Shown: positions 1,541-60,132 of the stretch, in pieces
How the letters are laid out: each line of letters begins with the position of its first letter
How positions within the stretch are numbered: position 1 is the first letter of the stretch
IMG/VR virus record: IMGVR_UViG_3300027771_001853
Location: 186,001 to 250,000 of that record
Length of the DNA stretch: 64,000 nt
Strand: one strand, 5' to 3'
Notes under the pieces: generated by a model
What the model saw: only the letters and a program-made list of their open reading frames with translations
Told to the model about the DNA's origin: nothing
Databases searched by the model: none
Position numbers and translations under genes: made by a program

Positions 1541-1575
1541 AGTTTATTATTTAACAATAAATACCCACATCATGA

Positions 1576-4500
1576 TTAAATAGGCGTACATGTAGTTGTC
1601 GTTGTTACTGGACAACATGGTATCCTTAGTGTCGGGTCTTGGTTCTGATAAGGTAACCAAGCTTGGAGACCAGCACACGGTGTTGGTGCTGGTGGTGATA
1701 GTAGTACGGCCCCTGTCACTGTTGGTCCGGTTGGGCTATTTATTATTCTTGCACAAACCGGTACACCACTGATAATAAATAAGTGTGAGGAACCTAAACT
1801 TAAACCATTTATATCAGTAAGTAGTGTTCCAATTGCTACGTATTGTTGGAATACTCCGTTCGTATCAGAACAACACTCTTCCAAACCTCTACCAGTTACA
1901 TTTACAGTTGTTGTTGTTGTGGTTGGGCAACACCCGACTGATTGTCCTTTGTCTTCACATGTGTCACACTGGTCTGTCAACCCGGCTGGCCAAATAGGGA
2001 ATAAGAATGTACCACTAATTGTCCCTACAATAGGTGCACAACCAACACATTTATGGAAACAACAAGCCATACCGTCAAATTGACCACCACTAACCACCAA
2101 TCTAAAGGTATCGTCATTGTTCAATCCAGCAACTCCAGATACAGCACCAGGGTCACCTACTAATTCATAAACATCCCCAGTACAACAATGCTTTACATAT
2201 TGTACTTCTTGGGTTGTAGTGGTTGTGGTGGTTGGTAGTGGGGCACAACACCCTAATGGGAGTGCTTGGTCTAAGGTATAACAATCACTATACACTATTC
2301 CTGGTGTAGTAAAAGTTGATACCGACAAACCAATAGGGTTATTTATAACTTTAAAACATCCCCTTATAATGAGTCCAGTAGTATCTACCAATTGGGTACT
2401 AAACGCTTGACCAACGATTAGACCATTAAGATACACTTCAAATGCTCCTAACGCTACATATTGGTCAAATGCCCCAGTTACTGGGTCCATACAACAAGAC
2501 TCAACACCTATTGTACCACCTATTGTAGTTGTGGTAGTACAGGGAGCTTCCTCATCAAGTACACATATATTACAAGGGTCCTGATAAACAAGAGATGAGT
2601 AGATATTAACTGGTGTTATGGAAACAGCTACACCTGGACCACTCACGTTTGAGACGAACTCCCAACACCCTTCTTGAAGTGAGAATGGTGCTGTAATAAT
2701 ATTACCATATACTACGTCACCTAATATTAAATTACTGTTTAACCAAGTTAATATCACACCTGTAGCTATATACTCATCATAAGGTGGACAACATTGTCTA
2801 ACACCTAAGGTTGGGGATGGTGTTGTAGTAGTTGTGGATACCGGTATTGTAGTTGTCGTTGTTACTGGACAACACAAAGTGTAATTGGTATTTGTATTTA
2901 ATTCTGCACATGATGATGATACAAAAGAAGGTGCAAACATATTAGTTTGTATTATACCAACCGGGTTATTTATTATTTTCCAACAACCAGTATAATCGGA
3001 TGGCATTATAGTACTATAAAACGCGTCACCCAAATTCATCCCCGCTAGAATCGTATAGAGTGTCCCTGCGGCTACAAATTGTAAGGTAGGGTCGCAACAA
3101 TTTTCTAAACCTAATGGGCCAGAAGATGTGGTAGTTGTAGTTACTGGTCCTGTTGTGGTTGTTGTGGTTGGTGGTACCGTGGTTGTTGTTGTTGTTGGAC
3201 AACTACAAGGTTGGTACATTTCTCTACAAATCATACAAGCGTAAGGATAATCCGTTGTCCAAACATCATCTATGTTATTTAAAGTTAACATAGGTGCTCC
3301 CACTACTGGTTCGTAGGTATGGATAGCTTCGTCAACAATAGTAAGACACATATTAGGACATGGTGTGTGTATAGTATCTATTGGTACTATACTTGGGTTA
3401 CCTGTGGTACCACTAACTAAACTAGGTATGTCGTATACGGTATTATAATACACTTGATTTTTATTACAACATAGGTTTTCCCCCCAATATGGGTTAGTTG
3501 GGTCATAACAACATGTTAATAGTCCGTATGTCGTACAACAACCAGTATGACTTGTACCTGAATAATTGTAACATGGGTCTTGTTTATCAACGTTACGAGG
3601 ATTTACCGATATAGGTCCTATTTGGTTGTCTATATATTCCCATACTGTCTGTCCTAAATCCCATGCTGGGTTACTTGCCGGTATAGACGTGTTAACAATA
3701 GTTGAAGCTGTGGCTATTTGGTATGGGTTGTTACCACCAACACAGTTAATATTATCACACCATTGTACTACCCACGATGCTATTTCAAGTGGTGGTATAT
3801 TCACATATTGGAATGGAACTATCTGGTAGTGTCCAATACCAGGTGCGTTATTTTGATTTACGTAGATATAATCAGGTGCACTACCTCCTTGTATTTCATC
3901 TAAACAGTACGTACCATCGGCTGATGTTAAACATACATCATCCTCTACACTTGTAGATGTACCAGTGTAAAATATTTCTAAGTGAGAAACACCAGATAAA
4001 CAGAAACAATCTGCACACCTTTTCGTTGTAGTGGTTGTAGTTGAGGGACAAGGGACAGACCAACTAAAATTAGTCTCCGTACAACCTGAACATATACAAG
4101 GTGGGTCCCCTGCCGCGACACTATTAGTACACCAAAACTGATATGTAAATCCAGCCGGAACTACTGGTGCTGACGGTTCACTTGGAACAACAACATAACA
4201 CCCAGGAACCCCGTTAATTGTACCCAAAAGTCCTTGACCTACTAATATGTCGGTTTGGTCATTTGGATACGATAATATCGTATTACAATCAGCTGTTAAT
4301 GAGAACACATACTCTTCACAACAAGCAGATAACGCGAAAGGTAGACATACGGTAGTAGTGGTTGTAGTACAAGGAATCTCACACGCGGCACAACTATAAA
4401 GTGGTATAGGTGGGTAATTTATACTAATTATTGGGCCCTGTTCTCTACCTATTGTTTCCCAACATTCATTTGTAAGAGTATCGTAGAAAGCATTATAAGA

Positions 4501-7500
4501 AGTTAAACCTGAAGCTGGATTAGTTAAATCACCACACCACCTAGCAAACACAATATTATTTGTTTTACAACAAGCTGATAAACCTTGACATGTTGTGGTT
4601 GTTGTGGTTGGTGGGACTGTTGAGGTTGTTGTAGTAGCTGACCATGCTGTTGTTGTGGTTGTTGTTGGTGGGACTGTGGTTGTCGTACATACAATATGGT
4701 GGGTATCTAAACATCCACCAATAGAAAAACAATCTTGGTAGAATATACTTGGCACTACACTTATATTGTAAAGGTCCGGTCCTGGTATTTCTATTCTCTC
4801 ATAACACATATTAGTCCCCACATCATAAAACACTTGACCGATAGGCATAAAACTTAAATCTGTTTTAGTACAACCAGAACAAGTTTCATTAGTGGTTGTA
4901 AACTTTCTAACAGGTCTAATATATTTTGGGCTACCTTGTATAATATTATTATTTATGTCTGGGTAAGGTATGAGAGATTTACTATGTAATTCTGAACTAA
5001 ATAACTCAGGGAATATGGAGTCTCTACCCGAACATGGTGTACCTGTAGGGTAGTTAGGTCCATTAGACATACCTAAACTTAAATGTATATTATTAAACCC
5101 ATTAAACATTGGGAAGTATTCCGCCCTACTGGCATCACATTCACTAGAAGTCCAGTAATACCCACCTTCAGCAAAATTATATGTAGAGTAAAAAGTTTCG
5201 TTTGGTGGTCCTGCGGCTAGAGGGTTTTCTAAACCAATAGTTTGACCCCCAGTAGAACCAACAAGTCCATTATACATTTCATTCATTTCTTTAATGGTAG
5301 GTAAGTACCAATCTGTGTATCCACTAAATGAGAATGTAGAACATATGTGAGCTGCACTATGAAGAGTTATATTAGAAGCGTCTAAATTACTTCCAGGGTT
5401 TGGCCAAACACTATTACCTATGTATTCTTTTGTACAATCCAAATAACCACCACCAGCATCAGCCTTTTTATCTTTACAATCATATGTAAAAGGTACTGTA
5501 TTACCACTACAAGGGTTTGTTCTAGCCCAATTAACATCAGTAGTACATGAAGGACAACACGGGTAACCGTAAATGTCTGGTGTACAAGCATTATTTATTT
5601 TTGATGTGTTGTCACTACCCGCGAATATTTCTCTTGAAGTTCCACTAACATAAAGGTTCATACATCCCCACATTGTAAATGTATGTGCTGAATCAGTCGC
5701 GTTTGCGGCTATTATATTTTGGGGTAAATCATAGTTAGATAAATTTACATCATATGGTGAAGCTTCCAAATAATTCCCTTGACCATCATGATAGAAGACA
5801 ACACCACCCGCTGGTCCCGTATCACCTATACTATATGTTTGTCCAGTTAAACAACAACAAGGTTTAATACCATAACAAATATGAGGACGAGTAGTAGTTG
5901 TTGTGGTAGGTCTATTAGTTGTTGTGGTGGTTGTTTTTGGTGGGTCCCATATTGTTGTAGTAGTTGTAACACAATCATCTACTATCTTATGAGTTATCTC
6001 ACAACACTCACAATCATCATAAGGTCCATTTAGTGGTACATTGACGTTATAATTTGTTGGTCCTGGGTACGCTATTCTTTCATAACATTGTCCAGATAAT
6101 GGGTCAAACCATGTATTACCTATTGGTACAGTAGATAAATCAGTAGTTGTATATCCAGAACAAGTTGCGTAATTATATGACCTAACAGGTCTTAACCACA
6201 TAAATAGGAAATTCTTCTGCAGTACCTGCATTGTTGTACCCCACGTAGTTGGGAGTCCAATAGCAATTGTATCGTATACTGGGTTGGCTGGATGTTCACT
6301 AGAAGTAATCCATATTGGTGGTTGGTCTGTTGAACCTGAAAAAGGTTTTAAGTCGTCTAAGTCGGCTAAATTATACAATGGAGATAATAGAGCTTGTCCT
6401 GGACCTATATTAAACCATAATTTTAACCATTCGTTATAACTTGGAGCAAACCAATCATCATACCCGTTATAAATTAAAGTGTCGAGATACGTTGCCCATG
6501 GGGTTGGGTCTGGACACCCAGCAGCAATAATCTCATTTGTATTTATTTTTCCCATACCAATTGAAGTACCTAGAGTTGGGCTCGGAAGTACAGGTGTGCC
6601 CCAACAACCCCATCTCATACCAAAACCACCAATTTCTGTTGATTTAGGTGCTACTTCATATATGATGTTATTAATCGTATCAACATGAAATACAAATCCT
6701 CCGGCTTGACCTACATCACCAACATTAGGAACAACACCAATTATAACGTCATCTTCACAACAACAAGGTTTTAACCCCCATATTTCACTTGGTCTTGTTG
6801 TAGTAGTGGTAACAGGTTCACAAATAATTTCATTAATTTGCTCACAAGCATCACAATCTATATAAGGACCTCCAGGATTTGGTACTGGAGCGGTAAAATC
6901 AAAATATGTTAGTCCTGGGTCAGCAATATGAGTAAAGCATTCACCTGACGTAGCGTCATACCAAGTTCCACCTATAGGGATTGCTGATAAATCTGTATAT
7001 GTAAAACCAGAACAACCAGTATCGTTTATACGTTCTGGCATACAATTCGCACCATTAGGGTAATCATCATTACAACAACAAGAATTAAGACCCATATTTG
7101 TAGTAGTATCATCCCAAGTTATACCTTTGTTAGTTAAACTTCCACCCCACCCTGAATTTGGATTTGTGTCACAATCTGAACAAGTGGTTCCGTTAGTTGA
7201 ATTCGTTACAGTACATACTAAATTAGAATAGAAGTCAGGAGTACCTTGACCCATATATCTTAGACAAGTACACGTCATACCTGGTATTCTTGAAGGCCCC
7301 AACCCTGACGGACCATTAGTGTAGGTTATATTGTCATTCCAGTAACACCATCTAACGGTTTCACCCACAGATGGACTTCCAAGATATTGATAGAAATCTA
7401 GATTGTTCGCTAAATAATCGACAGATGGGACAGTACTAGTATTTGTAACACCATCATAACAAGCGTCACCAATGTAGTTTGGTGTACCGAAATATTCGAT

Positions 7501-10500
7501 GCCCCATGTTTTGTTGACTGTCCCCAGAATGGAGGCTATATTAGGTATGTAGTCAGAAATTTCATTCCAACAAACCTCAAATAGGTGAGATACTGGAGCA
7601 GTGGATTTGGTGATGGTGGTGGTAGTGGTAAGGGTAGGAGATTGTGATAGTGACGATTCAAGGTTTTGGAACCTAGAAAATAACGGTACCACACCAACAT
7701 CAGTAGATATATTTAGTTTTTGTCCAAGGCATCTAGCTTCACCTGATTCGTATTTAACTTGGTCTACAATATCTAGAATTTCTATAGATTGGTGTCCATA
7801 GGCGTTATCCTGATACAAATTGATAAAGTCACCAATCTTAAGTGCGTTTACCGATGTTCCATCATTTCTAACAAAATTAGATAGGGGACCACCTCCTGAT
7901 GCTAATTGTTGTGTTGTGGTTGTGGTTGTTTGTCCAAATAAGGTAGTGGTTGTTGTTGTTGGTATAGCGTATGTTGTAGTAGTTGTTGTTGGTATAGCGT
8001 ATGTTGTAGTAGTTGTTGTTGGTATAGCGTATGTTGTAGTAGTTGTTAGTTGCCCAAATACTGTTGTTGTAGTTGTAATTGGGGGTATAGTGTATGTTGT
8101 AGTAGTTGTAGTTGGAGGTATAGCGTATGTTGTTGTAGTTGTAGTTGGCGGTATAGCGTATGTTGTTGTTGGTGTTGTAGTTGGGGGTGTAAATGCCTTT
8201 TTGTCTATATAAGTGCATGAAGTAGTATCACTTTTTGTAACATATTGGTCACCATCTTTTGTCCATACTTTAACTAAATAAGCTAGACCATTAACATTTA
8301 TATCTTCCCAACCTACCTTATTAACCCCCCCATTAGTAGGTTCGTAATATAGAACTGTTGGTGCGGTGGTAATTAGTTTAGTTTTTTCAGGTGAGGTTAT
8401 TTGACCGAAAATATCTCTAGTATCACCAATAAATTGTGGTACCTGTTGTAACATACTTAAACTTTGTAAATCTTCACACACACAACACTCATTATTAGTA
8501 CCTCCGGTTGATAGTCCGTTAACACCAAAATGCCACCAATTACCAACTGGGTAGTATGGGACCGCTGATGAAGATACTGTTCCCATATATTTTAAACATA
8601 GTACATCATTATTAAAACCATTTAAAGTGGAGTGTAGGGTAACTACTTGACCTACACCTGGACTACCAACCCAACTATAAAAGTAATTACCTCTAGTTAC
8701 CATATCATCTAACCCAACTGCTGTCATAAAGTCTATAAGTCCTGATGTTGTTCCCGGGGCGTCAATAGCTGATATGCCCACACCAGGTGGGAATGGTGAT
8801 GAAGTGGGTGATGGTAAAAAAGAAAATAGTTCACATTCCTCAAACACGTGAAAAGTACGTATCTCCGCTAATCCACCATCACAACTATAACAATCATTAT
8901 GTGTTGATAATACGGTAGCGGTACCAACAGGACAAATATCGTAATTAACGCTTAAAGGGCCCCATATTCTATTACCTACATAAGCAATCCAGTAGTCACA
9001 AAATATAGCCATCAATATACCGAAATTACTACAATTACCTAGGGCGAATATTGGGTCGTTAGGGTATGACCAAGTATAAACACCCAAATATTTAATGCAA
9101 TTTGTAAATGTTCCTAGTGCTATACCTGAATCTGGGCAGGCGACTGTCCACTCCATTTCTACAGTTATCACTTCTCCAGGGTTTGGGCTACCTAGATGAT
9201 TATAAAAATTTTGATTATTTAATGAATATTCTTGTACTGCGGCTAAGTCTTGACCAAGGTATGCACTATCAACGTACCCTGTCTGAGAATCAAGCCATAC
9301 TGGAGCAAATTTAGGGTACCCATTCAGTTGTGGTATAGAAGGGTCACCTGGACAATCCTCAAACATATGTAATGTAACATCCACATTTGCGTTTGCGTTT
9401 AATGGTATAGTTGGTAAGGGAGTGCTGTTTGGTAAAGGGTTTAGGTTAACATAGTCTCCCAAGGTCACAGTCGTCTTAGGTTTACTATAGTGGGTACCTT
9501 CCGGCATTATCGGTTGGTATGTCCTTGTATCAGCTGACGGACAACAACATCTTTCTACCCCATAAATTTGTCTAAAAGTGGTACTAGTTGTTGTTGTTGT
9601 TCTAAATATCTTGGTTGTAGTTGTGGTTGTTGGTGCACAATATGGGTCTTCACCATCTCCATTAGCCATACATTCAACACAGTTATCAATACCAAAAAGA
9701 CCTAGTGGGTTTAAGGTTATCCCATTGGGTGGAAGAGGGTTAGGTGTCACTATAACCTTATAACACGCCTTATGGTCTATGTCATTAAATGTCTCACCAA
9801 TAGCCAAACCACTAACTGAACCAGGGTTATCCACAATCCATTGTTCTGCTGTTGAACCAGTGATACAACACTCTTCTACTGTAATACCTGAAGTACATGC
9901 TGTATGAAAACATACTGTCGCTGATAATGTAGCTATACCAATATTATTAGCTTGTGTAGTCCCTAACCAATTAGATAGTAAGTATTCGTGACTATGTACT
10001 GATATAAAACCAAAATGTGTTAACCCACTTACACACCTACCATCAGGTGTTTTACCTGGACCGTAACCAGAATTCCAAAAACAAGCATCCGCACAATAAG
10101 GGTTTGTTTGTTTTATAGCATCAAAATTATATAGACCACCACCATTATTTGCGGCACCAATATCTACAAAGTCCACCGCGGGAACTACTCTACCTTCAAC
10201 AGCTCCATACGCATTTAATTGAGTAATCCTTTCCTGTTGGGTATCATTTACTGGTAATGTGTAAACAAAACTATTAAATGAACCATTATTACCTGGAGTA
10301 CCAGTAGGTTGGTCCCAAACACCATTATAGTATGTACCCATAAAAGAATCAAAATCTCTTAAGTAATTTTCTGTTGGTGTTATTTTCTGTAACCCAGATG
10401 TTACATTAATACTGTTGAGTTGGTTGGTATTCCAATCAGTACAGGGTACTGGTGGTGTTATAACACCAACGCCACTTGGAGCATTACATACCGGTAACCA

Positions 10501-13500
10501 TGGACTATCGTTATACCAAGGTTCAGTTTCATTGACAAAAGAAATAACCACAGCATTAGGGTCATTTAGAGCCGCGGCTATTGGCATATCAAGTCCAGAC
10601 CCACATACACCTTGTGGAACACTTATCCCAACTGGGGTTGGTATAAATGCATTTGTACCTTCCCATGGGTATCGTGAATACCTTAACCAAGATTCAGATT
10701 GTTGTTGTGGTGGTGGTACTGTAGCCTGATATAAACACCCAGTATAACCAGGTAATGTTTGAATAAATTGTTGCCACCAAGGTAGAACCACATTATTAGC
10801 TAATTGAGCTACACTAACAGCAAAACTACCACTCCCATCATAAAACACATAAAAATTAGTACCAGAAAATATACATGGACATTCACTAGGTGGTGTAGGT
10901 GGGCATTCACATTCACACGATACTAGAAGTGTGGTTGTGGTTGTTGTTGGTGGTGCGGGTGTAGTAGTTGTAGTTGTTGGTGGCCCAAGTGTTGTCGTAG
11001 ACGTGGTAGTAGATGGGGCACACGGGTCTGTAGTTGTTGTTGTCGATACAGGTACTGTAGTTGTTGTGGTTGTGGGACAAGGATTGTCCGGTGTCTCACA
11101 AAAACTACCAGCACATTCTAAACCAGCTAACGCTGTTACTCCAGATATACTACCTAATATAGTATTAGTTATAGGTCCTGAAGGTAATGTATATTTTGTT
11201 AAAACTAGGTTATCTGTCGCTCCAGAACAACACGTATTTTCTCCCCAACTAATTTCAATATCGTTACCATGACTGGAGCCTGGGGCGTAATCGGATAGGT
11301 CAATTGGACTACCAGCTGGTATTGGGTTTTTGAAAAAGAAACAGTATGTGTGTTCCATTAGTGGAGTTGGTGTAAGTGCTGGAGCACCAGCAATACAAGG
11401 TGCCGCCCCACCACGACACCTACCACCACCTGCACCAGCACTAATTGGTGGTGTCGCATCACAAATAGCAACAGGGAATCCAGGTCCTGTTGGGTACCTA
11501 ACTAATTCATATTTCCAACTTCCTATAATTGTACCAGAACCGTCAGGATGTCTAACCGTGAAGTTCCAATTATTAGTACTAGCGGTAAAATTATCCCCGT
11601 TAAAAACTTGACCTGATTGGGCTGAGTCATACATCAATACTTTCATATACTCTGCACCCATTACTTGGTCTTTGAATGTCCCCACCCCTGGTAGGTTACC
11701 GTTTGTACCTACATCAAATACCCCTTGTGTTACAATTTCTCCTGGTGTAGTCATACCCCCATCTTTCCATATCTCAGCATATTCTGGTTGACATGGTGTA
11801 CCCATTCCACCAAATTGTAAAGTTATTTCAAATTGAGATGGTTCACCTACCATTACACCTAAACCTATATTAGCTGGATTTTCAAGATATAAAATATTTG
11901 CACAATTCCCAGCAGGAGAATTAGGCCATTGGCCACATTGGGCTACACCTGCCTGATACCAATCTCTATTACCGGTACAATTTTGATGCTGAAGAGTACC
12001 TTCACCACAAGGTGAAGGTGTTGTAGGCATACATGATGGAACACCAGGAAAATTACCATCCATTACAATATTATAGTCCCATTGTCCTATGTTAGTGTTA
12101 GTAAATGGGTCGTATACCGTTAAAGTTAGTGGGTTGGTTGTGTCCCCAGTTAACATATCCATACTTACAAAATTCCCATCTTTGTCAAGTACGTTTAAAC
12201 TTAACTTAAGTGATTCAGCCCCTATTATTGGTCCAAACAATGGAGCAGCTCCTTGAATATTTCCGGGAGCACATGACCAAGGGGTGGGAATAGTAAAGGC
12301 ACATTGACCAGATATAATCAGACTTTCGTCAATCCACGTATGTTGGAACTGTTGTGGTGTACCCCCCGAACAACTAGGTAGTTGTCTTACAATGTAAAGG
12401 TCTTCACAATCATATAGTAAACCAGCGGAAATACTACTATTAAGTAATGGGTTTATAGTCCCAGGTATTGGATTGGCGTTTAATGTTGTACCATCAAAAA
12501 TACACACATAACCAGCTGATGAATTACAATTTCCTGGACCAAAAGAACATTCATCCAAATAAGTATAAAAATTGTTAGTTCCTGGTACGTTAGATAACCC
12601 ACTCATATGAGCATATGGGTTAGGTGGACTTGTAAATACGGTAAAATCACCCAAATAAGTTACACTACCATTAACCCATGGTTGTATCTGATATACCGGA
12701 TGAACAGTATTATTATAAGGAATAAAAATTAATTTATCATTTAAGCTATCATAACCTAAACAACCTTCACCTAACTCCTCAGTTCTTATACCACTTGTGT
12801 TATTACACACATCATAACCAGTATAAGTTTGAGCTAAAGACCCACTACCTGTGTTAGGGTTTACTTGGTATATGTGTAAGTCGTATCTAGATGTACCATT
12901 ACAAGTATCATCTATTTTATGTTCTAAAAATGCCCCATATAAAAAGTTATTTGTTGTTCTTTTAGCGAACCCTTGGAAGAACATATGTGGTATAGCTCCC
13001 CACATTGTTGGGTCTTTTAAAGCAATAGGTAACGTGGTTTGGGTGTGGGGTGAAGTTTTATGTATCGAATAAAAACCATTATTTCCTGTGGTTCCCGTAT
13101 TGATTATCTCCCAAGCTCCTGTAATTAAGCAACACTCATCACAACACGGTATCGTTGTCGTTGTTGTTGACGCGTAAGGGTCTGGTGTTGTCGTACTAGT
13201 AACGCAATCACCAGTAAGTGGTATAGTACCAAAATCACATGGGTCTGGTGTTGTAGTTGTTGTGGTTGGTGGTACCGTGGTTGTTGTTGTTGTTGGACAA
13301 TCACCAGTTAACGGGATTGTACCAAAATCACATGGGTCAAGTGTTGTTGTAGTTGTTGTTTGACCAGGTAACGTGGTTGTAGTTGTTGTTTGACCAGGTA
13401 ACGTGGTTGTAGTTGTTGTTTGGCCAGGTAATGTAGTTGTAGTTGTAAAACCTAAAATTGTTGTGGTGGTAGTAACACACTCACACTGACCATCAGTCAC

Positions 13501-15974: not shown

Positions 15975-16035
15975 ATTATTATAATTATTCTATAAATATA
16001 TTACCATCTATTATTACTTGTAATTTCATGATTAA

Positions 16036-17240: not shown

Positions 17241-17272
17241 ATAAATACTTATAGGTGTAGTTAATATTTATA
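17241..17272. promoter_or_regulatory. Back-to-back divergent putative late promoters (TATTTAT on each coding strand)
   Basis: ataaata at 17241-17247 serves the minus gene; tatttata at 17265-17272 serves the plus gene. Confidence 0.65.
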
Positions 17273-22148: not shown

Positions 22149-22172
22149 TAAAATATCTTTAACTATAAATAG

Positions 22173-26343: not shown

Positions 26344-26379
26344 TTTGTCATATTTTTATAACAATAAATATTTGCAACC

Positions 26380-27078
26380 CTACTTCCTAAGTGTCTCTAC
26401 TAAAGATTTATATATTACTTTATATTTTTTTAAAGCATTTCTTATTTCTTTGGTAGTTAATCCGGTCATTTCTCTTAGAGATAGGAGTATTAAGTTTTTA
26501 TTAAATTTATTACCTTTTCCGTGTACAAAAATAGCTTCGTAGTTTACAAACACGTCCACTAAAGCTAATCCTATTTTTTCTTCATTCTCGTTAAGGTCAT
26601 TTTCTTCCATGAACTCCTCAATCTGTATTATTAACTTTTTAGTAAGTTCATTAGGTTCTAACCCATCTTTATGCATATAATAAACCATGTCATCCCTTTC
26701 CTGTATACTACTGGAGATGTCCTCATAGGATATGTTTCTAATCATTTCTTTCCTATCTTTTATTATCTGACCCATTAGGTAATTCTTACATATGGTCCCA
26801 AAATAAGAATAAGCTTTTTTATTTTTTTCTGGTTTAAACTTTTCAGCTTTTGTAATTAAGAAAGAAAGTGTGTCAGCGTGAATATCTCTAAATTCTAAAC
26901 CTTTTCTATATAATTTATACCTTCTAATAATAGAGTCAATCATTTTATTTAGTGGAGCATATAGATAATCTTTATATATCCTATCTTTTTCAGTCCAAGT
27001 ACTGGCTGTTAGAAACATTCTAACAGCGTACTCTTGTTCTTGACCGAAATATACTTTTTGGGTTGACTTACGGGGCAT
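26380..27078 (-). CDS. Phage sigma factor, T4 gp55-like (late transcription)
   Basis: KFKPEKNKKAYSYFGTICKNYL matches the gp55-type sigma region 2 pattern. Confidence 0.7.
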   Translation of the reverse strand: MPRKSTQKVYFGQEQEYAVRMFLTASTWTEKDRIYKDYLYAPLNKMIDSIIRRYKLYRKGLEFRDIHADTLSFLITKAEKFKPEKNKKAYSYFGTICKNYLMGQIIKDRKEMIRNISYEDISSSIQERDDMVYYMHKDGLEPNELTKKLIIQIEEFMEENDLNENEEKIGLALVDVFVNYEAIFVHGKGNKFNKNLILLSLREMTGLTTKEIRNALKKYKVIYKSLVETLRK

Positions 27079-49112: not shown

Positions 49113-49144
49113 TAAAACTAACAAATCTTAACAGTAAAATCAAA
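49113..49144 (-). promoter_or_regulatory. Putative Bacteroidota-type -33/-7 promoter
   Basis: TTTG-N20-TAGTTTTA. Confidence 0.5.
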
Positions 49145-50731: not shown

Positions 50732-50752
50732 ATTAATATATAAAACTTAAGA

Positions 50753-52591
50753 CTATCTAAGTTCTCTAATGTCAAACGTTCTAACACCGTCAATTGTAAT
50801 AGCTCCATAGAATCTATTGTTAACCACCTTTTTAGCGTATCTAGTCATGATACCCTTGATTGGTGCAAAGTTAAATGGATTATACATTGTTGGTGTAAGT
50901 TGTAATGGTACATAAGGAGCGTAAATATATCCTGTGTCTAATAAAGATGTTCCTTTATGTCCAATTAACACTTTGTTAGCTGGGAAGTAAGGGTCTCTAT
51001 ATACAGTATATCTACCTGATAATGTTCCAATCTTCTCAATACCCATATTGTACTGGTCTTGGTCTGGAGCTGCGTTTGAAGCGTGGAAGTATTCTAAGTC
51101 ATCAAATATTGCAGAACATTCAGATGAACAAACAATCCAGTTAGCACCACCTCTCAACGTAGATTTGTGAATCTGTGCTGAAATTTGGTTAATAGCAGTA
51201 ATCAGAGTTTGATTCCAGTCTTTTTGAGTATAAGGAGCTTGTCCCGCTTGGAAACGTTTCCATCCGTTGTAATCCCATCTTAATGTCCAAGATGCTGCCG
51301 CTCTTAAATCTTTAAGAATCTCACGGTCTATCTCAGCCGCAACTTCTTCAGATAATAGAGCTGTTAATTCAGCTTCTGCATCAATGTTATGGAACGCACT
51401 AACGTCTTGTGCAAGTTCTGGAGACCAAGTAGCTCTTAATTTTCTTTCTGTTACCGAAACAGTTACAGAGTCTAAATCAAATGAAACTTCACCTAATTCA
51501 TCTTCAAATTCAAGGTCTTGGTAAATTCTGTACTCAGCAGTAAAGTTAGTAGTTGCTAGTGTTGCGTTAACATTAGCTCCAACGTAACCATCTACAGACT
51601 CACATGTAATACATGCTGGACATGATAAGTCTAATTCAACGTAAAGGTAACCTTCACCATCACAAACGTTGTCATAAGTAGAATCTTTTCCTGGCCAGTA
51701 AGAAGTACCTTGTCCTGGAATATTATCTACAATACCTTTTCCGTATTTCTGAGTTACTAATCTAAAAGGTACATACCCTTGAGCTGCAACTACCTGAGTA
51801 GTACTACCAGTTGGACAACAAGTTACAGGATTTGTCGCTTTGAATTTCAAAGAAGACAAGAACTCTTCAGTATCCATCTCGTTACCATTAGGTCCAACTA
51901 ATTTACCTTGTCCTAAGTTATTAAATCCACCTACTCTAACAAGTAAGCTTCTAAGTCCACCATTAAGACAGTCGTAACTATTATATGTCCCACTAGTAGT
52001 TGAACCAGTAAGAGTTTCGTAGATAGTGGATGGAGTCATTGTTCCACCAGTAGTGTTCCACGTTACAAATTGAGCTGTACGTGACACACCTGAATATCTA
52101 CCTTTCGAAATATCGAATAAACCTCTACCATCTTCATAGTATTGGTCATATAAGTTTACAGTGTCGTAAGTTTGTTGATTTGCGTTAGTTGCACCTGGCA
52201 TTCCTTTTGGTTCGAAATGATTCCAAGTGTTATCTGCAGCACCTCCCCAACGTCTGTCGGAGATTTTTGGTACGAAGTAGAACAATTTACCAATTGGTAA
52301 GTTCAAAGCTTGTACCGATACAATGTCGTTAGCTAGTAATTTAGAAAATACTCTTCTAATTATTGGGAAAACAACTGTTTCAAATGAACCTGAGGCATCA
52401 GCTTGTGTTGCCTCGTTGATTAAATGCGTCGCTTGGTTTTCATATAACTGAGCGATGTTTTCTCTTGTATGACCTTTAAGTCCATCCAAGAAACCAAGTT
52501 TGTTCCATTTTTCAATAGTGTCTTCTCTAATAACTTTAAGATGTTTCAATCCGATATTACCTACTAATCCTGATTCTAATAAAGCACCCAT
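50753..52591 (-). CDS. Major capsid protein (T4 gp23-like)
   Basis: FPIIRRVF, VSVQ....P.G.LFY, RKLRA.WS.E.AQD, EIDREI, YAPYVPL, GIMTRY. Confidence 0.95.
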   Translation of the reverse strand: MGALLESGLVGNIGLKHLKVIREDTIEKWNKLGFLDGLKGHTRENIAQLYENQATHLINEATQADASGSFETVVFPIIRRVFSKLLANDIVSVQALNLPIGKLFYFVPKISDRRWGGAADNTWNHFEPKGMPGATNANQQTYDTVNLYDQYYEDGRGLFDISKGRYSGVSRTAQFVTWNTTGGTMTPSTIYETLTGSTTSGTYNSYDCLNGGLRSLLVRVGGFNNLGQGKLVGPNGNEMDTEEFLSSLKFKATNPVTCCPTGSTTQVVAAQGYVPFRLVTQKYGKGIVDNIPGQGTSYWPGKDSTYDNVCDGEGYLYVELDLSCPACITCESVDGYVGANVNATLATTNFTAEYRIYQDLEFEDELGEVSFDLDSVTVSVTERKLRATWSPELAQDVSAFHNIDAEAELTALLSEEVAAEIDREILKDLRAAASWTLRWDYNGWKRFQAGQAPYTQKDWNQTLITAINQISAQIHKSTLRGGANWIVCSSECSAIFDDLEYFHASNAAPDQDQYNMGIEKIGTLSGRYTVYRDPYFPANKVLIGHKGTSLLDTGYIYAPYVPLQLTPTMYNPFNFAPIKGIMTRYAKKVVNNRFYGAITIDGVRTFDIRELR

Positions 52592-52619: not shown

Positions 52620-54101
52620 TTATTTTATTTTACTCATGATATCTAAACTTCTTGCGATTTGTGGGTCAACATACGTTCTTGATTCTCTCAATTTCGATGC
52701 TCCCGTCGCAGGAGATTTATTTATCTTTTTTTGTACACTTTCACTAAGTTGTACAGTCTTTTTGCTATTTTTACTCTCGTAAGATTCTGTTACAACACTT
52801 TTAGTACTAGAAGAAAGTTGTTTCTTCACGTTCTTATATAGTGCTTTAGATTCTTTAAGAGATTCAACTGAGTCAAACCTTCTAAGAATGTTAATTTTCT
52901 CAGACTTGTTAGTTGTGTGTTCTGTAAACAATTTCGTAGCGTAAGCTAAGTTAGAATTGAATACAGCGACTTCATTTAACTTGTCTCTAAACATTTTAAG
53001 AGCTTTTTTATATTCTCCATTTTTGTTTTTAAGAATACCAACTTCCCCTTTTAGATTATCGATAGTTTCAGTAAGAATTTTAGTGTCGTCCATTCTTTTT
53101 CTTTCGTTTATAAAACGAGTTCTTATAGAACGTTTAGACTCATTCATATTGATTCCGGCTTTTTCTCTTGCAGCTTTATTGAACTTGTTAGTTCTATTAC
53201 CTGCATGAACTTTTTGACTTAGGTTGTTTCCACGATACATTTCTTGAAAATCTGCTTCCCCTTCTTCTTTGGCTGTTTCTCTAGTCTTTCCCCCTCGGCC
53301 ATAACGACCTTTCTTTTTACGGTCTCCCGTTGGGATATCACCTTTCTTACCACCATAGTTTTCTTCCATATCAGTTTCCATGTCCACTTCATCCATGTCC
53401 ATGTCCATATCAACTTCATACGTTGGTTCTTGCGTTTCTTCCATATCGTCATGACGTTCAGAATCATAATGTGCATCCTTTTCTAACTTCTCAATTTGTG
53501 AGTAGTCATCTTCAGCTGCATCACCAAAATAATTTCCATCATCTTCTTCCAAGTCTTCCGCTTCAACATCAACGTCGTCCTCGTCTTCATCTTCTTCGTT
53601 CATATCGACATCATCTTTTTTAGATTCGTCTAACTCTATTCGGTACTCCTCTCCAGTACCCTCATCTTCTATGCTGATTACATCATCGTCCTGTTTTACG
53701 ATTACGCCATCTTCAGCACCCATAGCTTTAAAGACTTTTAGTACATCTTCATCCGATGCTTGTGTTAAGTCTAGTGGTTCAAACTCGTCATCGCCTTCAG
53801 GTGATGGGATATCGTCAACATCAATTTCGTCCGCCATAGCTAAAACGTCCTCCATTTCTGTGTCTCCTCCCTCATCGTCCATGTCCATGACATCTTCGTC
53901 ATCATCGACCATAGCTTCGAGTTCTTGTTCTTTTATTACTTTTTTTGTTTTTAAACCATTGTTGGATAATGATTCTTTTACCAGTTCTTCAATTTCTTCC
54001 TTCATGGTAGAAGCAAGTATTTCTTTTGCATTGGATTTAACAGTTTCTTCAATCTGTTGGGCTTCAATCAGAGCCGATTCAAGTAAGGATTTATTACTCA
54101 T
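52620..54101 (-). CDS. Prohead core scaffold protein (gp22-like)
   Basis: Acidic coiled-coil protein between protease and MCP; LNEVAVFNSNLAYATKLF. Confidence 0.8.
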   Translation of the reverse strand: MSNKSLLESALIEAQQIEETVKSNAKEILASTMKEEIEELVKESLSNNGLKTKKVIKEQELEAMVDDDEDVMDMDDEGGDTEMEDVLAMADEIDVDDIPSPEGDDEFEPLDLTQASDEDVLKVFKAMGAEDGVIVKQDDDVISIEDEGTGEEYRIELDESKKDDVDMNEEDEDEDDVDVEAEDLEEDDGNYFGDAAEDDYSQIEKLEKDAHYDSERHDDMEETQEPTYEVDMDMDMDEVDMETDMEENYGGKKGDIPTGDRKKKGRYGRGGKTRETAKEEGEADFQEMYRGNNLSQKVHAGNRTNKFNKAAREKAGINMNESKRSIRTRFINERKRMDDTKILTETIDNLKGEVGILKNKNGEYKKALKMFRDKLNEVAVFNSNLAYATKLFTEHTTNKSEKINILRRFDSVESLKESKALYKNVKKQLSSSTKSVVTESYESKNSKKTVQLSESVQKKINKSPATGASKLRESRTYVDPQIARSLDIMSKIK

Positions 54102-54203
54102 AAATTATCTTATATATTTTTATTATAGTTTTATTCATACATAAATAGTGAGGGGTACGTAAAAAGTTTGTGTTTTACACCTCAAAACCCGTAAAATTTA
54201 ACT

Positions 54204-54929
54204 TTATCTATCTAAAAAGTTGTTTAACTTCTTCATCATAGTTAAAGCATGTGTATTTGGACCATTAAAATCTGCTGGTATTGGTGGTGGTGTTGCCTCT
54301 TCTAAAGTCTCTTCATATTTGTCTTTGTCTTTTATGTCTTTGAATAGGTAAGCTCCTGGAGTTGATGGTGACGACACTAAATCAAAACATATCAATTCAA
54401 AATCATCTTGTACTATATTTTTTCCTCCTTCACTCTTTAGTGACCCTACACCCCTAGAAGAAATACCTAGAGTAACACCATGTCTTAATAGATTAGCTGC
54501 TATATCACCAACACATGAGATAATACCCTTAGTGTGGTAAGCTGGTGAGGTTAGTATTTGTAGTTTCCCCATTAATGTGTCCCCGTCCCAAAAAGTCTCC
54601 ACAACTCTATGGGAACTTCTTTCTAAGTCCACTAATGACGATTCTGGGTGATTTAATTCGGATAAGGCTCTACCTTGTCCTATTAGTTGTTGGTATTTGT
54701 CTACCTCTCTCTTTAATATGTCTGCTGGGTATATCCTACCATTTCTGTTTTGAACCCCACACTTCTGTAGGACAGCATAAATAAAAACACCTTCAGAATC
54801 TTTAAATCCTTTGGTTTCTGTTATTATTTTTTTATTTAAATCGTAGTGTGGTGATATGTGTCCCGCATCAATTTCTAGTAGGACTCCTTTACCGATTTCG
54901 TTAGCTTCAAGTAATTTATATGTACGCAT
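54204..54929 (-). CDS. Prohead protease (gp21-like)
   Basis: NRNGRIYP, ELNHP, SH, GISSRGVGS, FDLVSSPSTPGA. Confidence 0.95.
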   Translation of the reverse strand: MRTYKLLEANEIGKGVLLEIDAGHISPHYDLNKKIITETKGFKDSEGVFIYAVLQKCGVQNRNGRIYPADILKREVDKYQQLIGQGRALSELNHPESSLVDLERSSHRVVETFWDGDTLMGKLQILTSPAYHTKGIISCVGDIAANLLRHGVTLGISSRGVGSLKSEGGKNIVQDDFELICFDLVSSPSTPGAYLFKDIKDKDKYEETLEEATPPPIPADFNGPNTHALTMMKKLNNFLDR

Positions 54930-54972
54930 AGATTAATATCTTTACATATAAATACAATAGAGATAATTAAAA

Positions 54973-55404
54973 TTATTTTTTATTTGAGTAGAAGTTAAAG
55001 TATTTGTTATTTTTAAAATTCTGGTTTTGAATATGACCTATTGTTTTGTGTACAGAATCTTTTATTGTTTGTGAACGGATGTTCTCTTTAACTTTAAGAA
55101 ATAGGGTTATTTCACAAGAAATATAACTTCTTTTTAATAGTTCGATACCACTTGTTCGTAAATCCAAATCTACAATATTTTTTTCTGTTTTAAATAAGTT
55201 ATCGTCCAATACCTCATTTAAACTAATTTTAATATCTCTTTTTAATAACCCAACAACCCTAACCCAATTAGGTGCTTCGTTAATTGGTTGGGCCCAAGAT
55301 GAAAGATTCATATATAGCGATTTAAAATTCTTGGAGTCTACTGTCCCGTAGTTAGTTTTAAAACTAGGGTGTAGGTTAAATTTGATTTGTTTTCCTGACT
55401 TCAT
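54973..55404 (-). CDS. Hypothetical phage protein
   Basis: 143-aa ORF with its own promoter-like element. Confidence 0.7.
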   Translation of the reverse strand: MKSGKQIKFNLHPSFKTNYGTVDSKNFKSLYMNLSSWAQPINEAPNWVRVVGLLKRDIKISLNEVLDDNLFKTEKNIVDLDLRTSGIELLKRSYISCEITLFLKVKENIRSQTIKDSVHKTIGHIQNQNFKNNKYFNFYSNKK

Positions 55405-55422
55405 GATATATTCTATTTTAGT

Positions 55423-55454
55423 AAAATATACTAACGAATTACTTATAAGTCAAA
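55423..55454 (-). promoter_or_regulatory. Putative Bacteroidota-type -33/-7 promoter
   Basis: TTTG-N20-TATATTTT. Confidence 0.5.
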
Positions 55455-55459
55455 ATAAT

Positions 55460-56191
55460 CTAAGATAGGTCCTCTTCTAATTGTTGTAACCTTAATAAGT
55501 CTTTTTTTCTATACCCACAATCAACCACCTCATTTTCTACAACTAAAAGTTTATCTTTTAACTCTGTATTTTCAGTTTCTTTGATTAGGTTCGTTAGTAA
55601 CTTATTTAGATTGTCTTTACTTGTATCCACTTTTTCTTTGAGTTCTCCCACTTCTATGGATAGGTATTCTTTTAGTTTACCTTTGTCGGATTCACTTAAA
55701 GAAGAATATTTTTCATTATATAACCTAGTTAAACTAGAAACTAATAATGAATGTCTTACTGTTGTTGTTTCATTAATTTGTTCTGGTTGATTTAACCACG
55801 TTACTAATTCTTTTTTTATTTCATTATGTTTTCTTGGGTTATATGAAAAGTTTTCAAAAATAAGTTTATCTAGTTTTTGATAAATTTTTTCACTATCACC
55901 CTTATAATAAGGACTTTTTTCTATTAGTTTATTAATATTTGTGGATTCCGCTATTAGAACTTTAGATTTTGATTTTAGTTCAGTTAGGACGTTTTCTAAG
56001 AAAATCCTTGCCTCATTTTTATCAGTGAACCTTTGTTTATCTATTTCACCATACAGTGTAAAAAATTCTCTTAGTGTTTTGGTCTTTTTTAAAGACCCCA
56101 TTAATACATTAAAATTTCTTTTAAATGTGCTTTTGTTAGAATATGATTCTGTTAGAATGTCGTTGATTCCCTTTTTTATTTTACCAAACAT
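55460..56191 (-). CDS. Hypothetical helical head-module protein
   Basis: 243-aa ORF between portal and protease; TATTTATA upstream. Confidence 0.7.
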   Translation of the reverse strand: MFGKIKKGINDILTESYSNKSTFKRNFNVLMGSLKKTKTLREFFTLYGEIDKQRFTDKNEARIFLENVLTELKSKSKVLIAESTNINKLIEKSPYYKGDSEKIYQKLDKLIFENFSYNPRKHNEIKKELVTWLNQPEQINETTTVRHSLLVSSLTRLYNEKYSSLSESDKGKLKEYLSIEVGELKEKVDTSKDNLNKLLTNLIKETENTELKDKLLVVENEVVDCGYRKKDLLRLQQLEEDLS

Positions 56192-56215
56192 AGATTTATA
56201 TTTTACTATAAATAT

Positions 56216-58066: not shown

Positions 58067-58071
58067 AATTT

Positions 58072-58102
58072 TAAATTTACGATAATAATATCGGTTGTCA
58101 AT
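58072..58102 (-). promoter_or_regulatory. Putative Bacteroidota-type -33/-7 promoter upstream of portal
   Basis: TTG-N19-TAAATTTA. Confidence 0.45.
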
Positions 58103-58105
58103 TAT

Positions 58106-58351: not shown

Positions 58352-58358
58352 ATTATTA

Positions 58359-60092
58359 TTATTTTAGTCCTCCGAATAACCATAAATATTCTTTAGGGTT
58401 GTTTGGGTCCATATTGACAGGTCTCCCTGAAACTGTATGTGGACTCCATACCGGTTTATTACCTCTGGTTGGTTCTTCTCTTGCTACATCGGTGGTAACC
58501 CAACTATCTAACATTGCTTTAGCCTGGTTTGTGTTCCTTTCTAGTTCAGCGAAAGAATTTTGGGCTACGTATAATGCCATAGCAATTGCCATAATTAAGT
58601 CATCGTGGTGTCCTTTCATATGGTCTGGACGACCATTTAAATAAACAAATGTTTTAAACTCATTAATTAACCTATGTGACCTAACAATAAAACCTGTCCT
58701 TAATTGTTCTTCTAGAGCTTGTATTATTTGTGCTCTTTTACTGTTAAAGTTAATCCCGGGACATTTATCCTCTTGGTTTGGGTTGAACTTCCAAATGTCG
58801 TTAGATTTTACATTATCATAATATAAATTTTTGTATCCTAGTTCTATTAATTTTCTAGACGTTGACACTCCCATACCACCGGTAATGTCTACCACAATAA
58901 AACACTTATATTTTATAGCCCATTTATTTGCTAATTCAGCCGCTATATCTGGTGGGATTTTCCCTAAGTATTCTAATACTTGTTCCCTATCATCAAAATC
59001 TATAATAGTAAAAGATGTAAAATCGTCACTATCCCCTCTGGAAACATCAATCCCCATAATGTAACGATGACCTTCTTTTGGTGGTTTCCAAACCCATAGA
59101 GTATTACCTACCCATATCTCTAGTGGGTCACACACGTCTTTCATTAAGTCAGCTATAGTGTCTGAAGGTATAACATTATCACCCGAACCTAAAAATGCAC
59201 ATTCTAGTTCTTGTGATATTTTTCTTCTGTCAAACTTTAATTTTTTACACATTTTTTCAAACCAATCAGTAAATGGTTTGTAACCTAACTGTAATAATTC
59301 ATCAGCCCTATCTAACGAGTTTTCTAATATTTCTTCATCTTTATACTCATCTCTATTTAATAGGAAATGTGTAATATCTTTAGTTTTTACCCACCTTAAT
59401 CCTTTATTAAATCTAGGGTCACGAAACCACGTTAAACTACTAATTTTAAATTGGTTTAGTCCTCTAATGGATTGGTCATATATCTCATAATAAATCCTGT
59501 CGAATCCGTTCGGTGTGGATATCACCACAACCTTACCCCCTGTAGCTAAAGATGCCATACACGCTGCCCATAAATCATCACCGGACTCTATGTAAGCCGC
59601 CTCATCAAATATTAACATAGTGGGCGTGTAACCCCTCAACGCATCCACAGATGTTGCTACAGCTTTTACTTCTGAATCATTATTTAATTTATAATGTTTT
59701 TGAGTGTCTTTGTCTTTAGAAAACCCAACATTTATCCAATCGGGCCACTGACGTAAAAATCCTTTTATTTTACTAGCCATCTCTACTGCCGTATCTAATT
59801 TATTAGCTAATATAAGTATTTTTTCTGGTTTTTCTTTTGATGCGAATTGTAGTGTTTTAGATATCCAAGCTGATGTAGCGGTAGACACTCCTGCCTGACG
59901 ATACTTTAAAACTATATTATCATTATAGTTTTCATAGTCATGAATCATCTCTACTTGTTCGGGAAATAATTTAAATGGGACGTACTTACTCTGAGTATTA
60001 TCATAAGTTTCCAAATATGTTCTTAGAGCATAATCGGTGTCTTTATAACACTTAGCGTATTCTTTTATATATTCTTGTCTATTCATAGCCAT
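58359..60092 (-). CDS. Terminase large subunit (T4 gp17-like)
   Basis: LKYRQAGVST, LIFDEAA, ISTPNG, QELEC.F, GIDVSRG, HDDLIMA. Confidence 0.95.
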   Translation of the reverse strand: MAMNRQEYIKEYAKCYKDTDYALRTYLETYDNTQSKYVPFKLFPEQVEMIHDYENYNDNIVLKYRQAGVSTATSAWISKTLQFASKEKPEKILILANKLDTAVEMASKIKGFLRQWPDWINVGFSKDKDTQKHYKLNNDSEVKAVATSVDALRGYTPTMLIFDEAAYIESGDDLWAACMASLATGGKVVVISTPNGFDRIYYEIYDQSIRGLNQFKISSLTWFRDPRFNKGLRWVKTKDITHFLLNRDEYKDEEILENSLDRADELLQLGYKPFTDWFEKMCKKLKFDRRKISQELECAFLGSGDNVIPSDTIADLMKDVCDPLEIWVGNTLWVWKPPKEGHRYIMGIDVSRGDSDDFTSFTIIDFDDREQVLEYLGKIPPDIAAELANKWAIKYKCFIVVDITGGMGVSTSRKLIELGYKNLYYDNVKSNDIWKFNPNQEDKCPGINFNSKRAQIIQALEEQLRTGFIVRSHRLINEFKTFVYLNGRPDHMKGHHDDLIMAIAMALYVAQNSFAELERNTNQAKAMLDSWVTTDVAREEPTRGNKPVWSPHTVSGRPVNMDPNNPKEYLWLFGGLK

Positions 60093-60132
60093 ATATAATA
60101 AATATCGACAAAATTATTCTAAGAGTACAATT

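What the first reader, a model, noticed from the sequence alone, without database searches (positions are those of the whole stretch)
1557..60104. Late promoter motif TATTTAT(A) is the reverse complement of the T4 late consensus
Seen: ten sites on the coding strand 5-40 nt upstream of structural or assembly genes, including a divergent pair where the motif flips with gene orientation. It was not seen directly upstream of glycan-island starts. Established: T4 gp55 recognises TATAAATA on the non-template strand. A gp55-like sigma is encoded at 26380-27078. Inference: this sigma has altered specificity (central AAA to TTT), which resembles the host TAnnTTT -7 element.
Basis: partly seen in the sequence, partly recalled or inferred. 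Interest (0 to 1): 0.65.

Follow-up and report, generated by a model that had tools for sequence, protein, structure and literature searches.

The report
Phage promoter TATTTAT, variant T4 late
A 7-base signal, TATTTAT, sits just upstream of most virus-particle genes in this 298-kb marine phage and its many relatives, and is most likely a variant of the phage T4 late promoter read by a distant relative of T4's late sigma factor.

Summary
The motif is not enriched across the whole window (36 found, 44 expected). It is strongly enriched in upstream intergenic DNA: 72 sense copies genome-wide against 13 ± 3 in shuffles.

In 79 related contigs it lies upstream of 254 of 649 genes in sense and 30 in antisense. 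It is invariant in front of protease (53/53) and neighbouring head genes while the flanks diverge. No -35 element accompanies it. The same pipeline run on T4 returns TATAAATA.

The ORF at 26380-27078 is a remote gp55 relative (profile-profile E 2.7e-5) with an extra C-terminal domain.

- The motif differs from TATAAATA at 2 of 8 positions (AA to TT), not AAA to TTT.
- The eighth base is A in only about half the sites.
- A second, RpoD-like phage sigma exists outside the window.
- Genuine host-type TTTG-N19-20-TAnnTTTG promoters form a separate class.
- The motif also precedes a helicase gene.

The cultured Flavobacterium phage immuto has both the sigma homologue and the motif. No transcription starts could be mapped. 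This is a new variant of a known kind.

The parts
1557..1563 (-). TATTTAT site, 16 nt upstream of the ATG of a 1977-aa ORF (its 5' part is window 2-1540)
15992..15998 (-). TATTTAT(A) site, 17 nt upstream of the 280-aa ORF 15132-15974
17241..17247 (-). TATTTAT site, 5 nt upstream of the 399-aa ORF 16036-17235; one half of the divergent pair
17265..17272 (+). TATTTATA site, 14 nt upstream of the 219-aa ORF 17286-17945; other half of the divergent pair
22165..22171 (-). TATTTAT(A) site, 16 nt upstream of the 504-aa ORF 20634-22148
26364..26370 (-). TATTTAT site, 20 nt upstream of the 122-aa ORF 25975-26343 that follows the sigma gene; immuto has the same arrangement of sigma, motif and small ORF
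26380..27078 (-). 232-aa sigma-like protein with an N-terminal sigma-2 domain remotely related to T4 gp55 and a 95-aa C-terminal helical domain of unclear fold; no TATTTAT directly upstream
   Evidence: Pfam Sigma70_r2 E 6e-4; phrog_234 'late sigma transcription factor' E 5e-4; BLASTP against T4 gp55 E 3e-5; profile-profile 74.6% probability, E 2.7e-5; structure match to 7d7d_F Z 7.5; C-terminal domain has no clear match
49113..49144 (-). Near-consensus host-type bipartite promoter candidate (TTTG, 20 nt, TAGTTTTA; final base A, not G), 26 nt upstream of the first gene of the glycan block, whose long same-strand run ends with the sigma gene
50753..52591 (-). Major capsid protein (T4 gp23-like); no motif of its own; probably co-transcribed from the site at 54141
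   Evidence: tblastn against the T4 gene 23 region E 3e-16, and against immuto E 3e-51
54141..54147 (-). TATTTAT site, 39 nt upstream of the 493-aa ORF 52620-54101 (position of T4 gp22); conserved in 37 of 38 orthologous loci
54948..54954 (-). TATTTAT(A) site, 18 nt upstream of the prohead protease gene 54204-54929; conserved in 53 of 53 orthologous loci
55423..55453 (-). Bipartite TTGAC-N-TATATTTT promoter candidate upstream of the 143-aa ORF 54973-55404; a different class, conserved as TTGACA-N17-TATAAT/TATATTT in relatives
56208..56214 (-). TATTTAT(A) site, 16 nt upstream of the 243-aa ORF 55460-56191; conserved in 43 of 43 orthologous loci
58382..58388 (-).
60098..60104 (-). TATTTAT site only 5 nt upstream of the large terminase ATG (58359-60092); the same 4-5 nt spacing in relatives implies a leaderless or near-leaderless mRNA

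Best explanation
TATTTAT(A/T) is the single-element, -10-type promoter of a phage-specific transcription class. This class drives mainly virion, assembly and lysis genes of a distant T4-superfamily phage that probably infects marine Flavobacteriia. The host RNA polymerase core most likely reads it when carrying the phage's own gp55-related sigma (window 26380-27078), which is itself expressed from a host-type promoter at the head of the glycan block. Transcription probably starts in the A-rich stretch 4-7 nt downstream of the motif, giving very short leaders (about 7-12 nt) or leaderless mRNAs such as the terminase.

Shown: motif position, strand specificity, conservation, absence of a -35 element, the gene-class bias, and remote homology of the sigma to gp55.

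Inferred: that it is a promoter, that it acts late, and which sigma reads it.
For: 1. TATTTAT is the top upstream 7-mer genome-wide (69/301 genes, 5 expected). It stands about 17 sd above intergenic-only shuffles.
2. In 79 related contigs it is in sense upstream of 254/649 genes against 30 in antisense. It is invariant upstream of protease (53/53), p243 (43/43), p493 (37/38) and portal (68/78) orthologues while the flanks diverge, and it often follows a terminator-like hairpin.
3. The logos show no -35 element, as for T4 late promoters.
4. The same pipeline on T4 returns TATAAATA: 21 sense, 7 antisense, 1.3 expected.
5. Gene classes: the motif sits directly upstream of 6 of 14 annotated virion or lysis genes against 1 of 17 DNA/RNA-metabolism genes (p = 0.03). 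Counting the gene immediately upstream on the same strand, this is 13/14 against 2/17 (p = 7e-6).
6. The sigma is related to gp55. Four gp55 DNA-pocket residues are kept: L54/I, R57, F86 and Y97 (PMC7892883).
7. The cultured Flavobacterium phage immuto has both a sigma homologue (E 3e-23) and TATTTAT enrichment (29 genes, 3.9 expected, including terminase and portal).
8. A separate host-type class exists, and one copy ends 6 nt before the 5' end of a tmRNA gene.
Against: - No transcription start or timing data. The only RNA runs held a 32-nt fragment.
- Homology of the sigma to gp55 is remote (PHROG E 5e-4; hhalign probability 75%). The protein has an extra C-terminal domain and lacks the gp55 clamp-binding tail.
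- No gp33 or gp45 homologue was detected.
- The motif also precedes a replicative helicase and, in relatives, the second-sigma operon, so 'late only' is doubtful.
- The pocket residues that differ from T4 are not shared with immuto.
Confidence: 0.6

Rival explanations
1. The motif is read by the phage's other sigma, the 264-aa RpoD-like protein at genome 85993-86787, and the gp55-like protein does something else.
For: The second sigma has strong regions 2 and 4 (Pfam E 5e-15 and 1e-13) and matches SigA/RpoD at E 1e-41. It is conserved across the clade. In several relatives its operon is preceded by TATTTAT, which would fit positive autoregulation.
Against: A sigma with a canonical region 4.2 (KERVRQ) is expected to use a -35 element, and TATTTAT sites have none. 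Conserved bipartite TTGACA-N17-TATAAT-like promoters exist and fit such a sigma better. Whether immuto has a homologue of it was not tested.
Confidence: 0.13
2. The motif is a variant -7 element read by the host primary sigma of a Bacteroidota host, possibly with a phage-encoded modifier, so no phage sigma is needed.
For: TATTTAT matches TAnnTnT of the host-type TAnnTTTG consensus. Bona fide host-type promoters are present in the genome. Immuto infects a Flavobacterium.
Against: There is no -33 TTTG at the expected distance. Position 6 is A at every site, where the host consensus has T. Position 8 is A or T, not G. The heptamer is invariant across lineages whose host-type sites vary.
Confidence: 0.12
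3. The motif acts at the RNA level, as a processing site or an AU-rich translation enhancer in an organism without Shine-Dalgarno pairing, rather than as a promoter.
For: The spacing to the ATG is fairly tight: main peak 13-17 nt. The element would be transcribed wherever genes are co-oriented.
Against: Spacings of 4-5, 23-29 and about 39 nt are also conserved. The motif is absent in front of the capsid gene and about 77% of genes. It commonly lies just after terminator-like hairpins. It flips with gene orientation in divergent spacers only about 50 nt long.
Confidence: 0.07

Closest known systems
Phage T4 late promoters (TATAAATA) read by gp55 with gp33 and the gp45 sliding clamp
   Same: A single short element of about 8 bp at -10 with no -35 element. 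Located in front of virion genes. 6 of 8 bases are identical. A phage sigma with a gp55-like sigma-2 domain is present. The head-gene order matches T4 (PMC7892883).
   Different: Positions 4-5 are TT instead of AA, and the eighth base is degenerate. The sigma is 232 aa with an added C-terminal domain and no clamp-binding tail. No gp33 or gp45 homologue was found. Leaders are much shorter (13-17 nt or leaderless, against 13-34 nt in T4).
Sinorhizobium phage PhiM9 / P10VF (T4 superfamily)
   Same: These phages have gp55 but no gp33, plus an additional canonical sigma factor encoded by the phage (PMC4621102).
   Different: Their extra sigma is RpoE-like; here it is RpoD-like. No promoter motif of this kind is reported there.
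Bacteroidota primary-sigma promoters (-33 TTTG / -7 TAnnTTTG; from my own knowledge of the Bacteroides and Flavobacterium literature)
   Same: A T-rich 3' half and similar length. Such promoters are present in this genome as a separate class.
   Different: TATTTAT has no -33 partner, an invariant A where the host element has T, and no terminal G.
Flavobacterium phage vB_FspM_immuto (NC_055915), a cultured relative
   Same: It encodes a full-length homologue of the sigma (gp118, annotated 'hypothetical protein'). It has TATTTAT(A) enriched upstream of terminase, portal and other genes. It shows the same arrangement of sigma, motif and small ORF.
   Different: The genome is 160 kb with family A polymerases. 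The sigma is only 26% identical. The motif is also found in the early or metabolic half of the genome.

Membership tests
T4-type (gp55-dependent) late promoter | Consensus TATAAATA on the non-template strand | tested here: not met
   The sense-strand consensus is [not T]TATTTAT[A/T]. TATAAATA occurs in sense upstream of only 16 genes, against 35 in antisense. The T4 control gives TATAAATA.
T4-type (gp55-dependent) late promoter | Single -10-type element with no -35 element | tested here: met
   Apart from a not-T preference at the base just 5' of the heptamer (up to 0.56 bit), no position from 40 nt upstream to the motif exceeds about 0.26 bit in 75 own sites or 241 sites from relatives.
T4-type (gp55-dependent) late promoter | Placed in front of late (virion, lysis) genes | tested here: met
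   13 of 14 annotated virion or lysis genes against 2 of 17 DNA/RNA-metabolism genes at operon level, p = 7e-6. Exceptions are the helicase and ribonucleotide reductase pair.
T4-type (gp55-dependent) late promoter | Transcription start about 6-7 nt downstream, active only late, dependent on gp55, gp33 and gp45 | not testable with these tools
   The RNA runs gave one 32-nt fragment. No gp33 or gp45 homologue was found.
gp55 late sigma family (phrog_234) | Sequence homology of the sigma-2-like domain to gp55 | tested here: met
   Weak but consistent: phrog_234 E 5e-4; BLASTP E 3e-5; profile-profile 74.6% probability, E 2.7e-5 over 113 columns; 7d7d_F Z 7.5 with 122 residues aligned.
gp55 late sigma family (phrog_234) | Conserved DNA-pocket and RNA-polymerase-contact residues (N13, L54, R57, F86, H95, Y97, T99; E70, D74, E77) | tested here: inconclusive
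   I50, R53, F81 and Y92 are kept. H95 becomes Y90 and T99 becomes G94. D65 and D69 are kept and E77 becomes S72. N13 cannot be aligned. Position 95 also varies within gp55 proper.
gp55 late sigma family (phrog_234) | C-terminal hydrophobic clamp-binding tail (LDFLY-type) | tested here: not met
   The C-terminus is a 95-aa helical domain ending in basic residues with no such tail. Cyanophage and Moby gp55 also lack the tail.
Bacteroidota primary-sigma promoter | -33 TTTG plus -7 TAnnTTTG, 19-21 nt apart | tested here: not met
   TATTTAT sites lack the -33 element, have A at position 6 and A/T at position 8. True examples of the class exist elsewhere in the genome.

The most novel reading that the evidence does not exclude
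A very large, globally distributed clade of uncultivated marine phages, together with the cultured Flavobacterium phage immuto, uses a late-promoter code not previously described (TATTTAT). It would be read by an unannotated two-domain offshoot of the gp55 family without gp33 or clamp coupling. This would be the last tier of a three-tier cascade: host-type TTTG/TAnnTTTG promoters, then a phage RpoD-like sigma with TTGACA/TATAAT promoters, then the gp55-like sigma with TATTTAT. It would be the first defined late-transcription system for phages of Bacteroidota.
Probability: 0.4. Interest if true: 0.6.

Novelty: new variant of a known kind. Interest (0 to 1): 0.5.

Why it matters
Transcription programmes of phages that infect Bacteroidota, major degraders of marine organic matter, are almost unknown. 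Their hosts also use unusual promoters.

A conserved 7-bp element has three practical uses:
- It marks virion-gene transcription units in hundreds of metagenomic contigs, which are otherwise about 80% unannotated, and so improves their annotation.
- It shows how gp55-type promoter recognition can drift (AA to TT at -10/-9) while keeping the single-element architecture.
- Through phage immuto and its Flavobacterium host, it can be tested at the bench.

Tried and rejected
- Window-wide counting of the motif shows no enrichment. Only the positional and strand tests are informative.
- Megablast of the window against GenBank phages found nothing.
- PHROG and Pfam scans left most proteins unannotated.
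- RNA evidence: only two runs on record as RNA (one a guess, both from one sample) held any words of the region. Laid on 5,991 bases, they gave one 74-nt contig with a 32-nt match at 90-95% likeness, so there is no start or strand information.
- gp33: neither the 122-aa ORF beside the sigma nor the sigma's C-terminal part matches T4 gp33.
- gp45 clamp: Pfam PF09116 and PF02916 find nothing in the genome.
- The C-terminal domain folded alone (pLDDT 86.5) has no convincing structural match (best Z 6.7; sigma region 4 chains at Z 4.5-4.7), so 'sigma-4-like' stays open.
- The idea that H95-to-Y and T99-to-G explain the changed bases was dropped, because immuto has F and Q at those positions with the same motif.
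- I first treated TTGACA-N17-TATAAT sites and TTTG-N20-TAnnTTTG sites as two classes. They overlap (TTTGAC..., TATATTT) and I could not separate them statistically.
- The large protein-database searches and complex prediction were not used. No binding claim is made.
Full report
**Context.** The window is bases 186001-250000 of a single 297,623-bp virus record, estimated 93% complete by CheckV. The genome is 35% G+C, and most genes lie on the - strand. The large terminase, portal, prohead protease, capsid, sheath, gp25-like, gp41-like and gp61-like proteins all match T4. The head genes follow the T4 order of portal, protease, gp22 position, capsid. The DNA occurs in marine, sediment and sponge metagenomes from 15 studies. 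More than 600 related portal genes are present in IMG/VR. It is therefore a distant, uncultivated member of the T4 superfamily.

**Observation.** There is an eleventh copy at 58382. All are in sense orientation, with their 3' end 5-39 nt from the next start codon.

Across the whole window the motif is not enriched: 36 copies against 44 ± 6 expected. The test that matters is positional.
- In the upstream intergenic DNA of the window there are 9 sense copies against 1.3 ± 1.1 in dinucleotide-preserving shuffles of those same segments.
- Genome-wide there are 72 against 13.1 ± 3.4, with a maximum of 23 in 500 shuffles.
- Of 189 copies in the genome, 85 lie in the 3.6% that is intergenic, and 71 are sense and within 60 nt of a start.
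- An unbiased scan ranks TATTTAT first among all 7-mers in 60-nt upstream regions: 69 of 301 genes against 5 expected.

As a positive control, the identical pipeline on T4 ranks TATAAATA first: 21 sense, 7 antisense, 1.3 expected. This also confirms that the orientation difference is real.

**Conservation.** In 79 related contigs (portal 64-75% identical) the motif is in sense upstream of 254 of 649 genes and in antisense upstream of 30, with 14.6 expected. It is again the top 7-mer. It is present upstream of the orthologues of:
- the protease in 53 of 53 loci;
- the 243-aa gene in 43 of 43;
- the 493-aa gene in 37 of 38;
- the portal in 68 of 78, although this genome itself has a different, bipartite element in front of its portal gene.

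The flanking bases diverge freely. Many sites follow a GC-rich hairpin plus a T run. In front of the terminase the motif ends 4-5 nt from the ATG in this genome and in relatives, which implies a leaderless or near-leaderless message.

Logos from 75 sites in this genome and 241 unique sites in relatives show several features:
- no -35-like information;
- a preference against T just 5' of the motif;
- A or T at the eighth position (A about 50%);
- in this genome's sites, an A-rich patch 4-7 nt downstream;
- a main spacing to the ATG of 13-17 nt.

**Gene classes.** The motif directly precedes the terminase, protease, sheath, gp25-like and adaptor-like genes and an endolysin-like gene. It also precedes the first gene of the runs that contain the capsid, baseplate wedge, tail-fibre and peptidase genes. 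It does not directly precede the DNA polymerase, primase, SbcCD-like, UvsX-like, SSB-like, exonuclease, ligase, Lon-like or RtcB-like genes, nor either sigma gene.
- Direct association: 6 of 14 virion or lysis genes against 1 of 17 DNA/RNA-metabolism genes (p = 0.03).
- Counting the gene immediately upstream on the same strand: 13 of 14 against 2 of 17 (p = 7e-6).

The exception is the gp41/DnaB-like helicase followed by ribonucleotide reductase. The 22-kb glycan block is confirmed as sugar-nucleotide and glycosyltransferase genes and has no such site.

**Other promoter classes.** Intergenic DNA also holds bipartite sites of the form TTTG, 19-20 nt, TAnnTTTG. This is the promoter form known from Bacteroidota, which I state from my own knowledge.
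- One copy ends 6 nt before the 5' end of a phage tmRNA gene found by Rfam (89.6 bits). That geometry is what a real promoter would have.
- A near-consensus copy (last base A) lies in front of the glycan block (window 49113-49144), whose same-strand run ends with the sigma gene.
- TTGACA-N16-17-TAnnnT sites precede the DNA polymerase, primase, RtcB-like and portal genes.
- Upstream of the 143-aa head-module gene such a site is conserved in nearly all relatives.

These two bipartite forms overlap, and I could not separate them.

**The sigma.** The 232-aa product of 26380-27078 gives weak hits to Sigma70_r2 (E 6e-4) and to the PHROG 'late sigma transcription factor' (E 5e-4). BLASTP against T4 gp55 gives E 3e-5. 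A profile of ten homologues against a profile of seven gp55 proteins gives 74.6% probability and E 2.7e-5 over residues 38-156 against T4 residues 42-155.

The AlphaFold model (pLDDT 73) has an N-terminal domain that matches sigma-2 domains at Z 7-8. T4 gp55 in the clamp-activated complex (7d7d_F) matches at Z 7.5, with the longest aligned stretch of that group (122 residues).

According to the gp55 structure paper, A-12 stacks on Y97, A-9 sits against N13 and H95, and A-8 bonds T99 (PMC7892883). In the alignment, L54, R57, F86 and Y97 correspond to I50, R53, F81 and Y92, which are invariant or nearly so in the clade. H95 and T99 correspond to Y90 and G94.

If the two motifs are in register, the bases that changed are -10 and -9. 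That change is suggestive. However, the immuto homologue has F and Q at those two positions with the same motif, and position 95 varies within gp55 proper. No residue-level code can be claimed.

The last 95 residues form a confident helical domain (pLDDT 86.5) with no convincing structural match. There is no LDFLY-type clamp-binding tail. No gp33 or gp45 homologue was detected. PhiM9-type phages set a precedent for gp55 without gp33 plus an extra sigma (PMC4621102).

**A second sigma.** Outside the window, at genome 85993-86787, a 264-aa protein has strong regions 2 and 4 and matches SigA/RpoD at E 1e-41. It is conserved in the clade. In this genome its operon follows a host-type site. In several relatives TATTTAT lies in front of that operon. 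This protein is the main rival reader of the motif. However, its canonical region 4.2 and the existence of conserved TTGACA/TATAAT-like sites make those sites the better match for it.

**A cultured relative.** Flavobacterium phage immuto encodes a full-length homologue of the gp55-like sigma. Profile E is 3e-23 and identity is 26%, and it is annotated only as a hypothetical protein. TATTTAT is upstream of 29 of its genes against 3.9 expected, and TATTTATA upstream of 21 against 1.6. These include the terminase, portal and many genes of the structural half. The arrangement of sigma, motif and a 116-122-aa ORF is shared. This links the sigma-motif pair to a Flavobacterium host and offers a test system.

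**Relation to T4 and to the host element.** TATTTATA is indeed the reverse complement of TATAAATA. Because the T4 box is nearly self-complementary, however, the two differ at only positions 4 and 5. Against TAnnTTTG, the motif matches TA and two of the three T's, but it always has A at position 6 and no terminal G.

Full-text searches found no report of this motif as a phage promoter. The only phage hit is the template-strand oligonucleotide of the T4 paper. The Far-T4 paper does not discuss promoters.

**Verdict.** I rate it a new variant of a known kind, of moderate interest.

Noticed in passing
genome 266526-266935 (+), outside the window (L017:9951-10360): A phage-encoded tmRNA gene (Rfam RF00023, 89.6 bits) that ARAGORN did not call. 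It begins 6 nt after a TTTG-N19-TATATTTG promoter-like site.
   Followed up: partly
genome 85993-86787 (-), outside the window (L007:9284-10078): A second phage sigma factor, RpoD/SigA-like with regions 2 and 4 (E 1e-41 to solved SigA chains). It is conserved in at least 235 related contigs. Its operon is preceded by a host-type site here and by TATTTAT in several relatives.
   Followed up: partly
window 54973-55453 and orthologous loci L041-L120: A bipartite TTGACA-N17-TATAAT/TATATTT element is conserved upstream of the 143-aa gene, between two TATTTAT-driven head genes. This puts a different promoter class inside the head module.
   Followed up: partly
window 1576-15114 (-): A single 4512-aa ORF with no TATTTAT directly upstream. 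The genome holds further giant ORFs of 3602, 2739, 2205, 1977 and 1808 aa, all without family matches where tested.
   Followed up: no
window 25975-26343 (-) and immuto 78906-79256: A 116-122-aa ORF directly downstream of the sigma gene, each with its own TATTTAT site. The two are only faintly similar (E 0.14). It is a candidate cofactor, but neither binding nor its conservation in the metagenomic relatives was tested.
   Followed up: partly
genome 270988-271079 and 280810-280890 (outside the window): A repeated divergent-promoter cassette of about 90 nt. It has two TATTTAT copies facing the - strand genes and a TATCTT(T/C)G element 4 nt from the ATG of the + strand gene.
   Followed up: no
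window 27089-49086 (-): A glycan block of about 22 kb with three GDP-mannose-dehydratase-like genes, a DegT-type aminotransferase, several glycosyltransferases, a fucosyltransferase-like gene and an asparagine-synthase-like gene. The genes are packed with almost no spacers, and the block ends at the sigma gene.
   Followed up: partly
whole window: Strong strand asymmetry: 36% T and 29% A on the + strand. The coding (-) strand is therefore A-rich, with almost no Shine-Dalgarno-like G runs before start codons.
   Followed up: no
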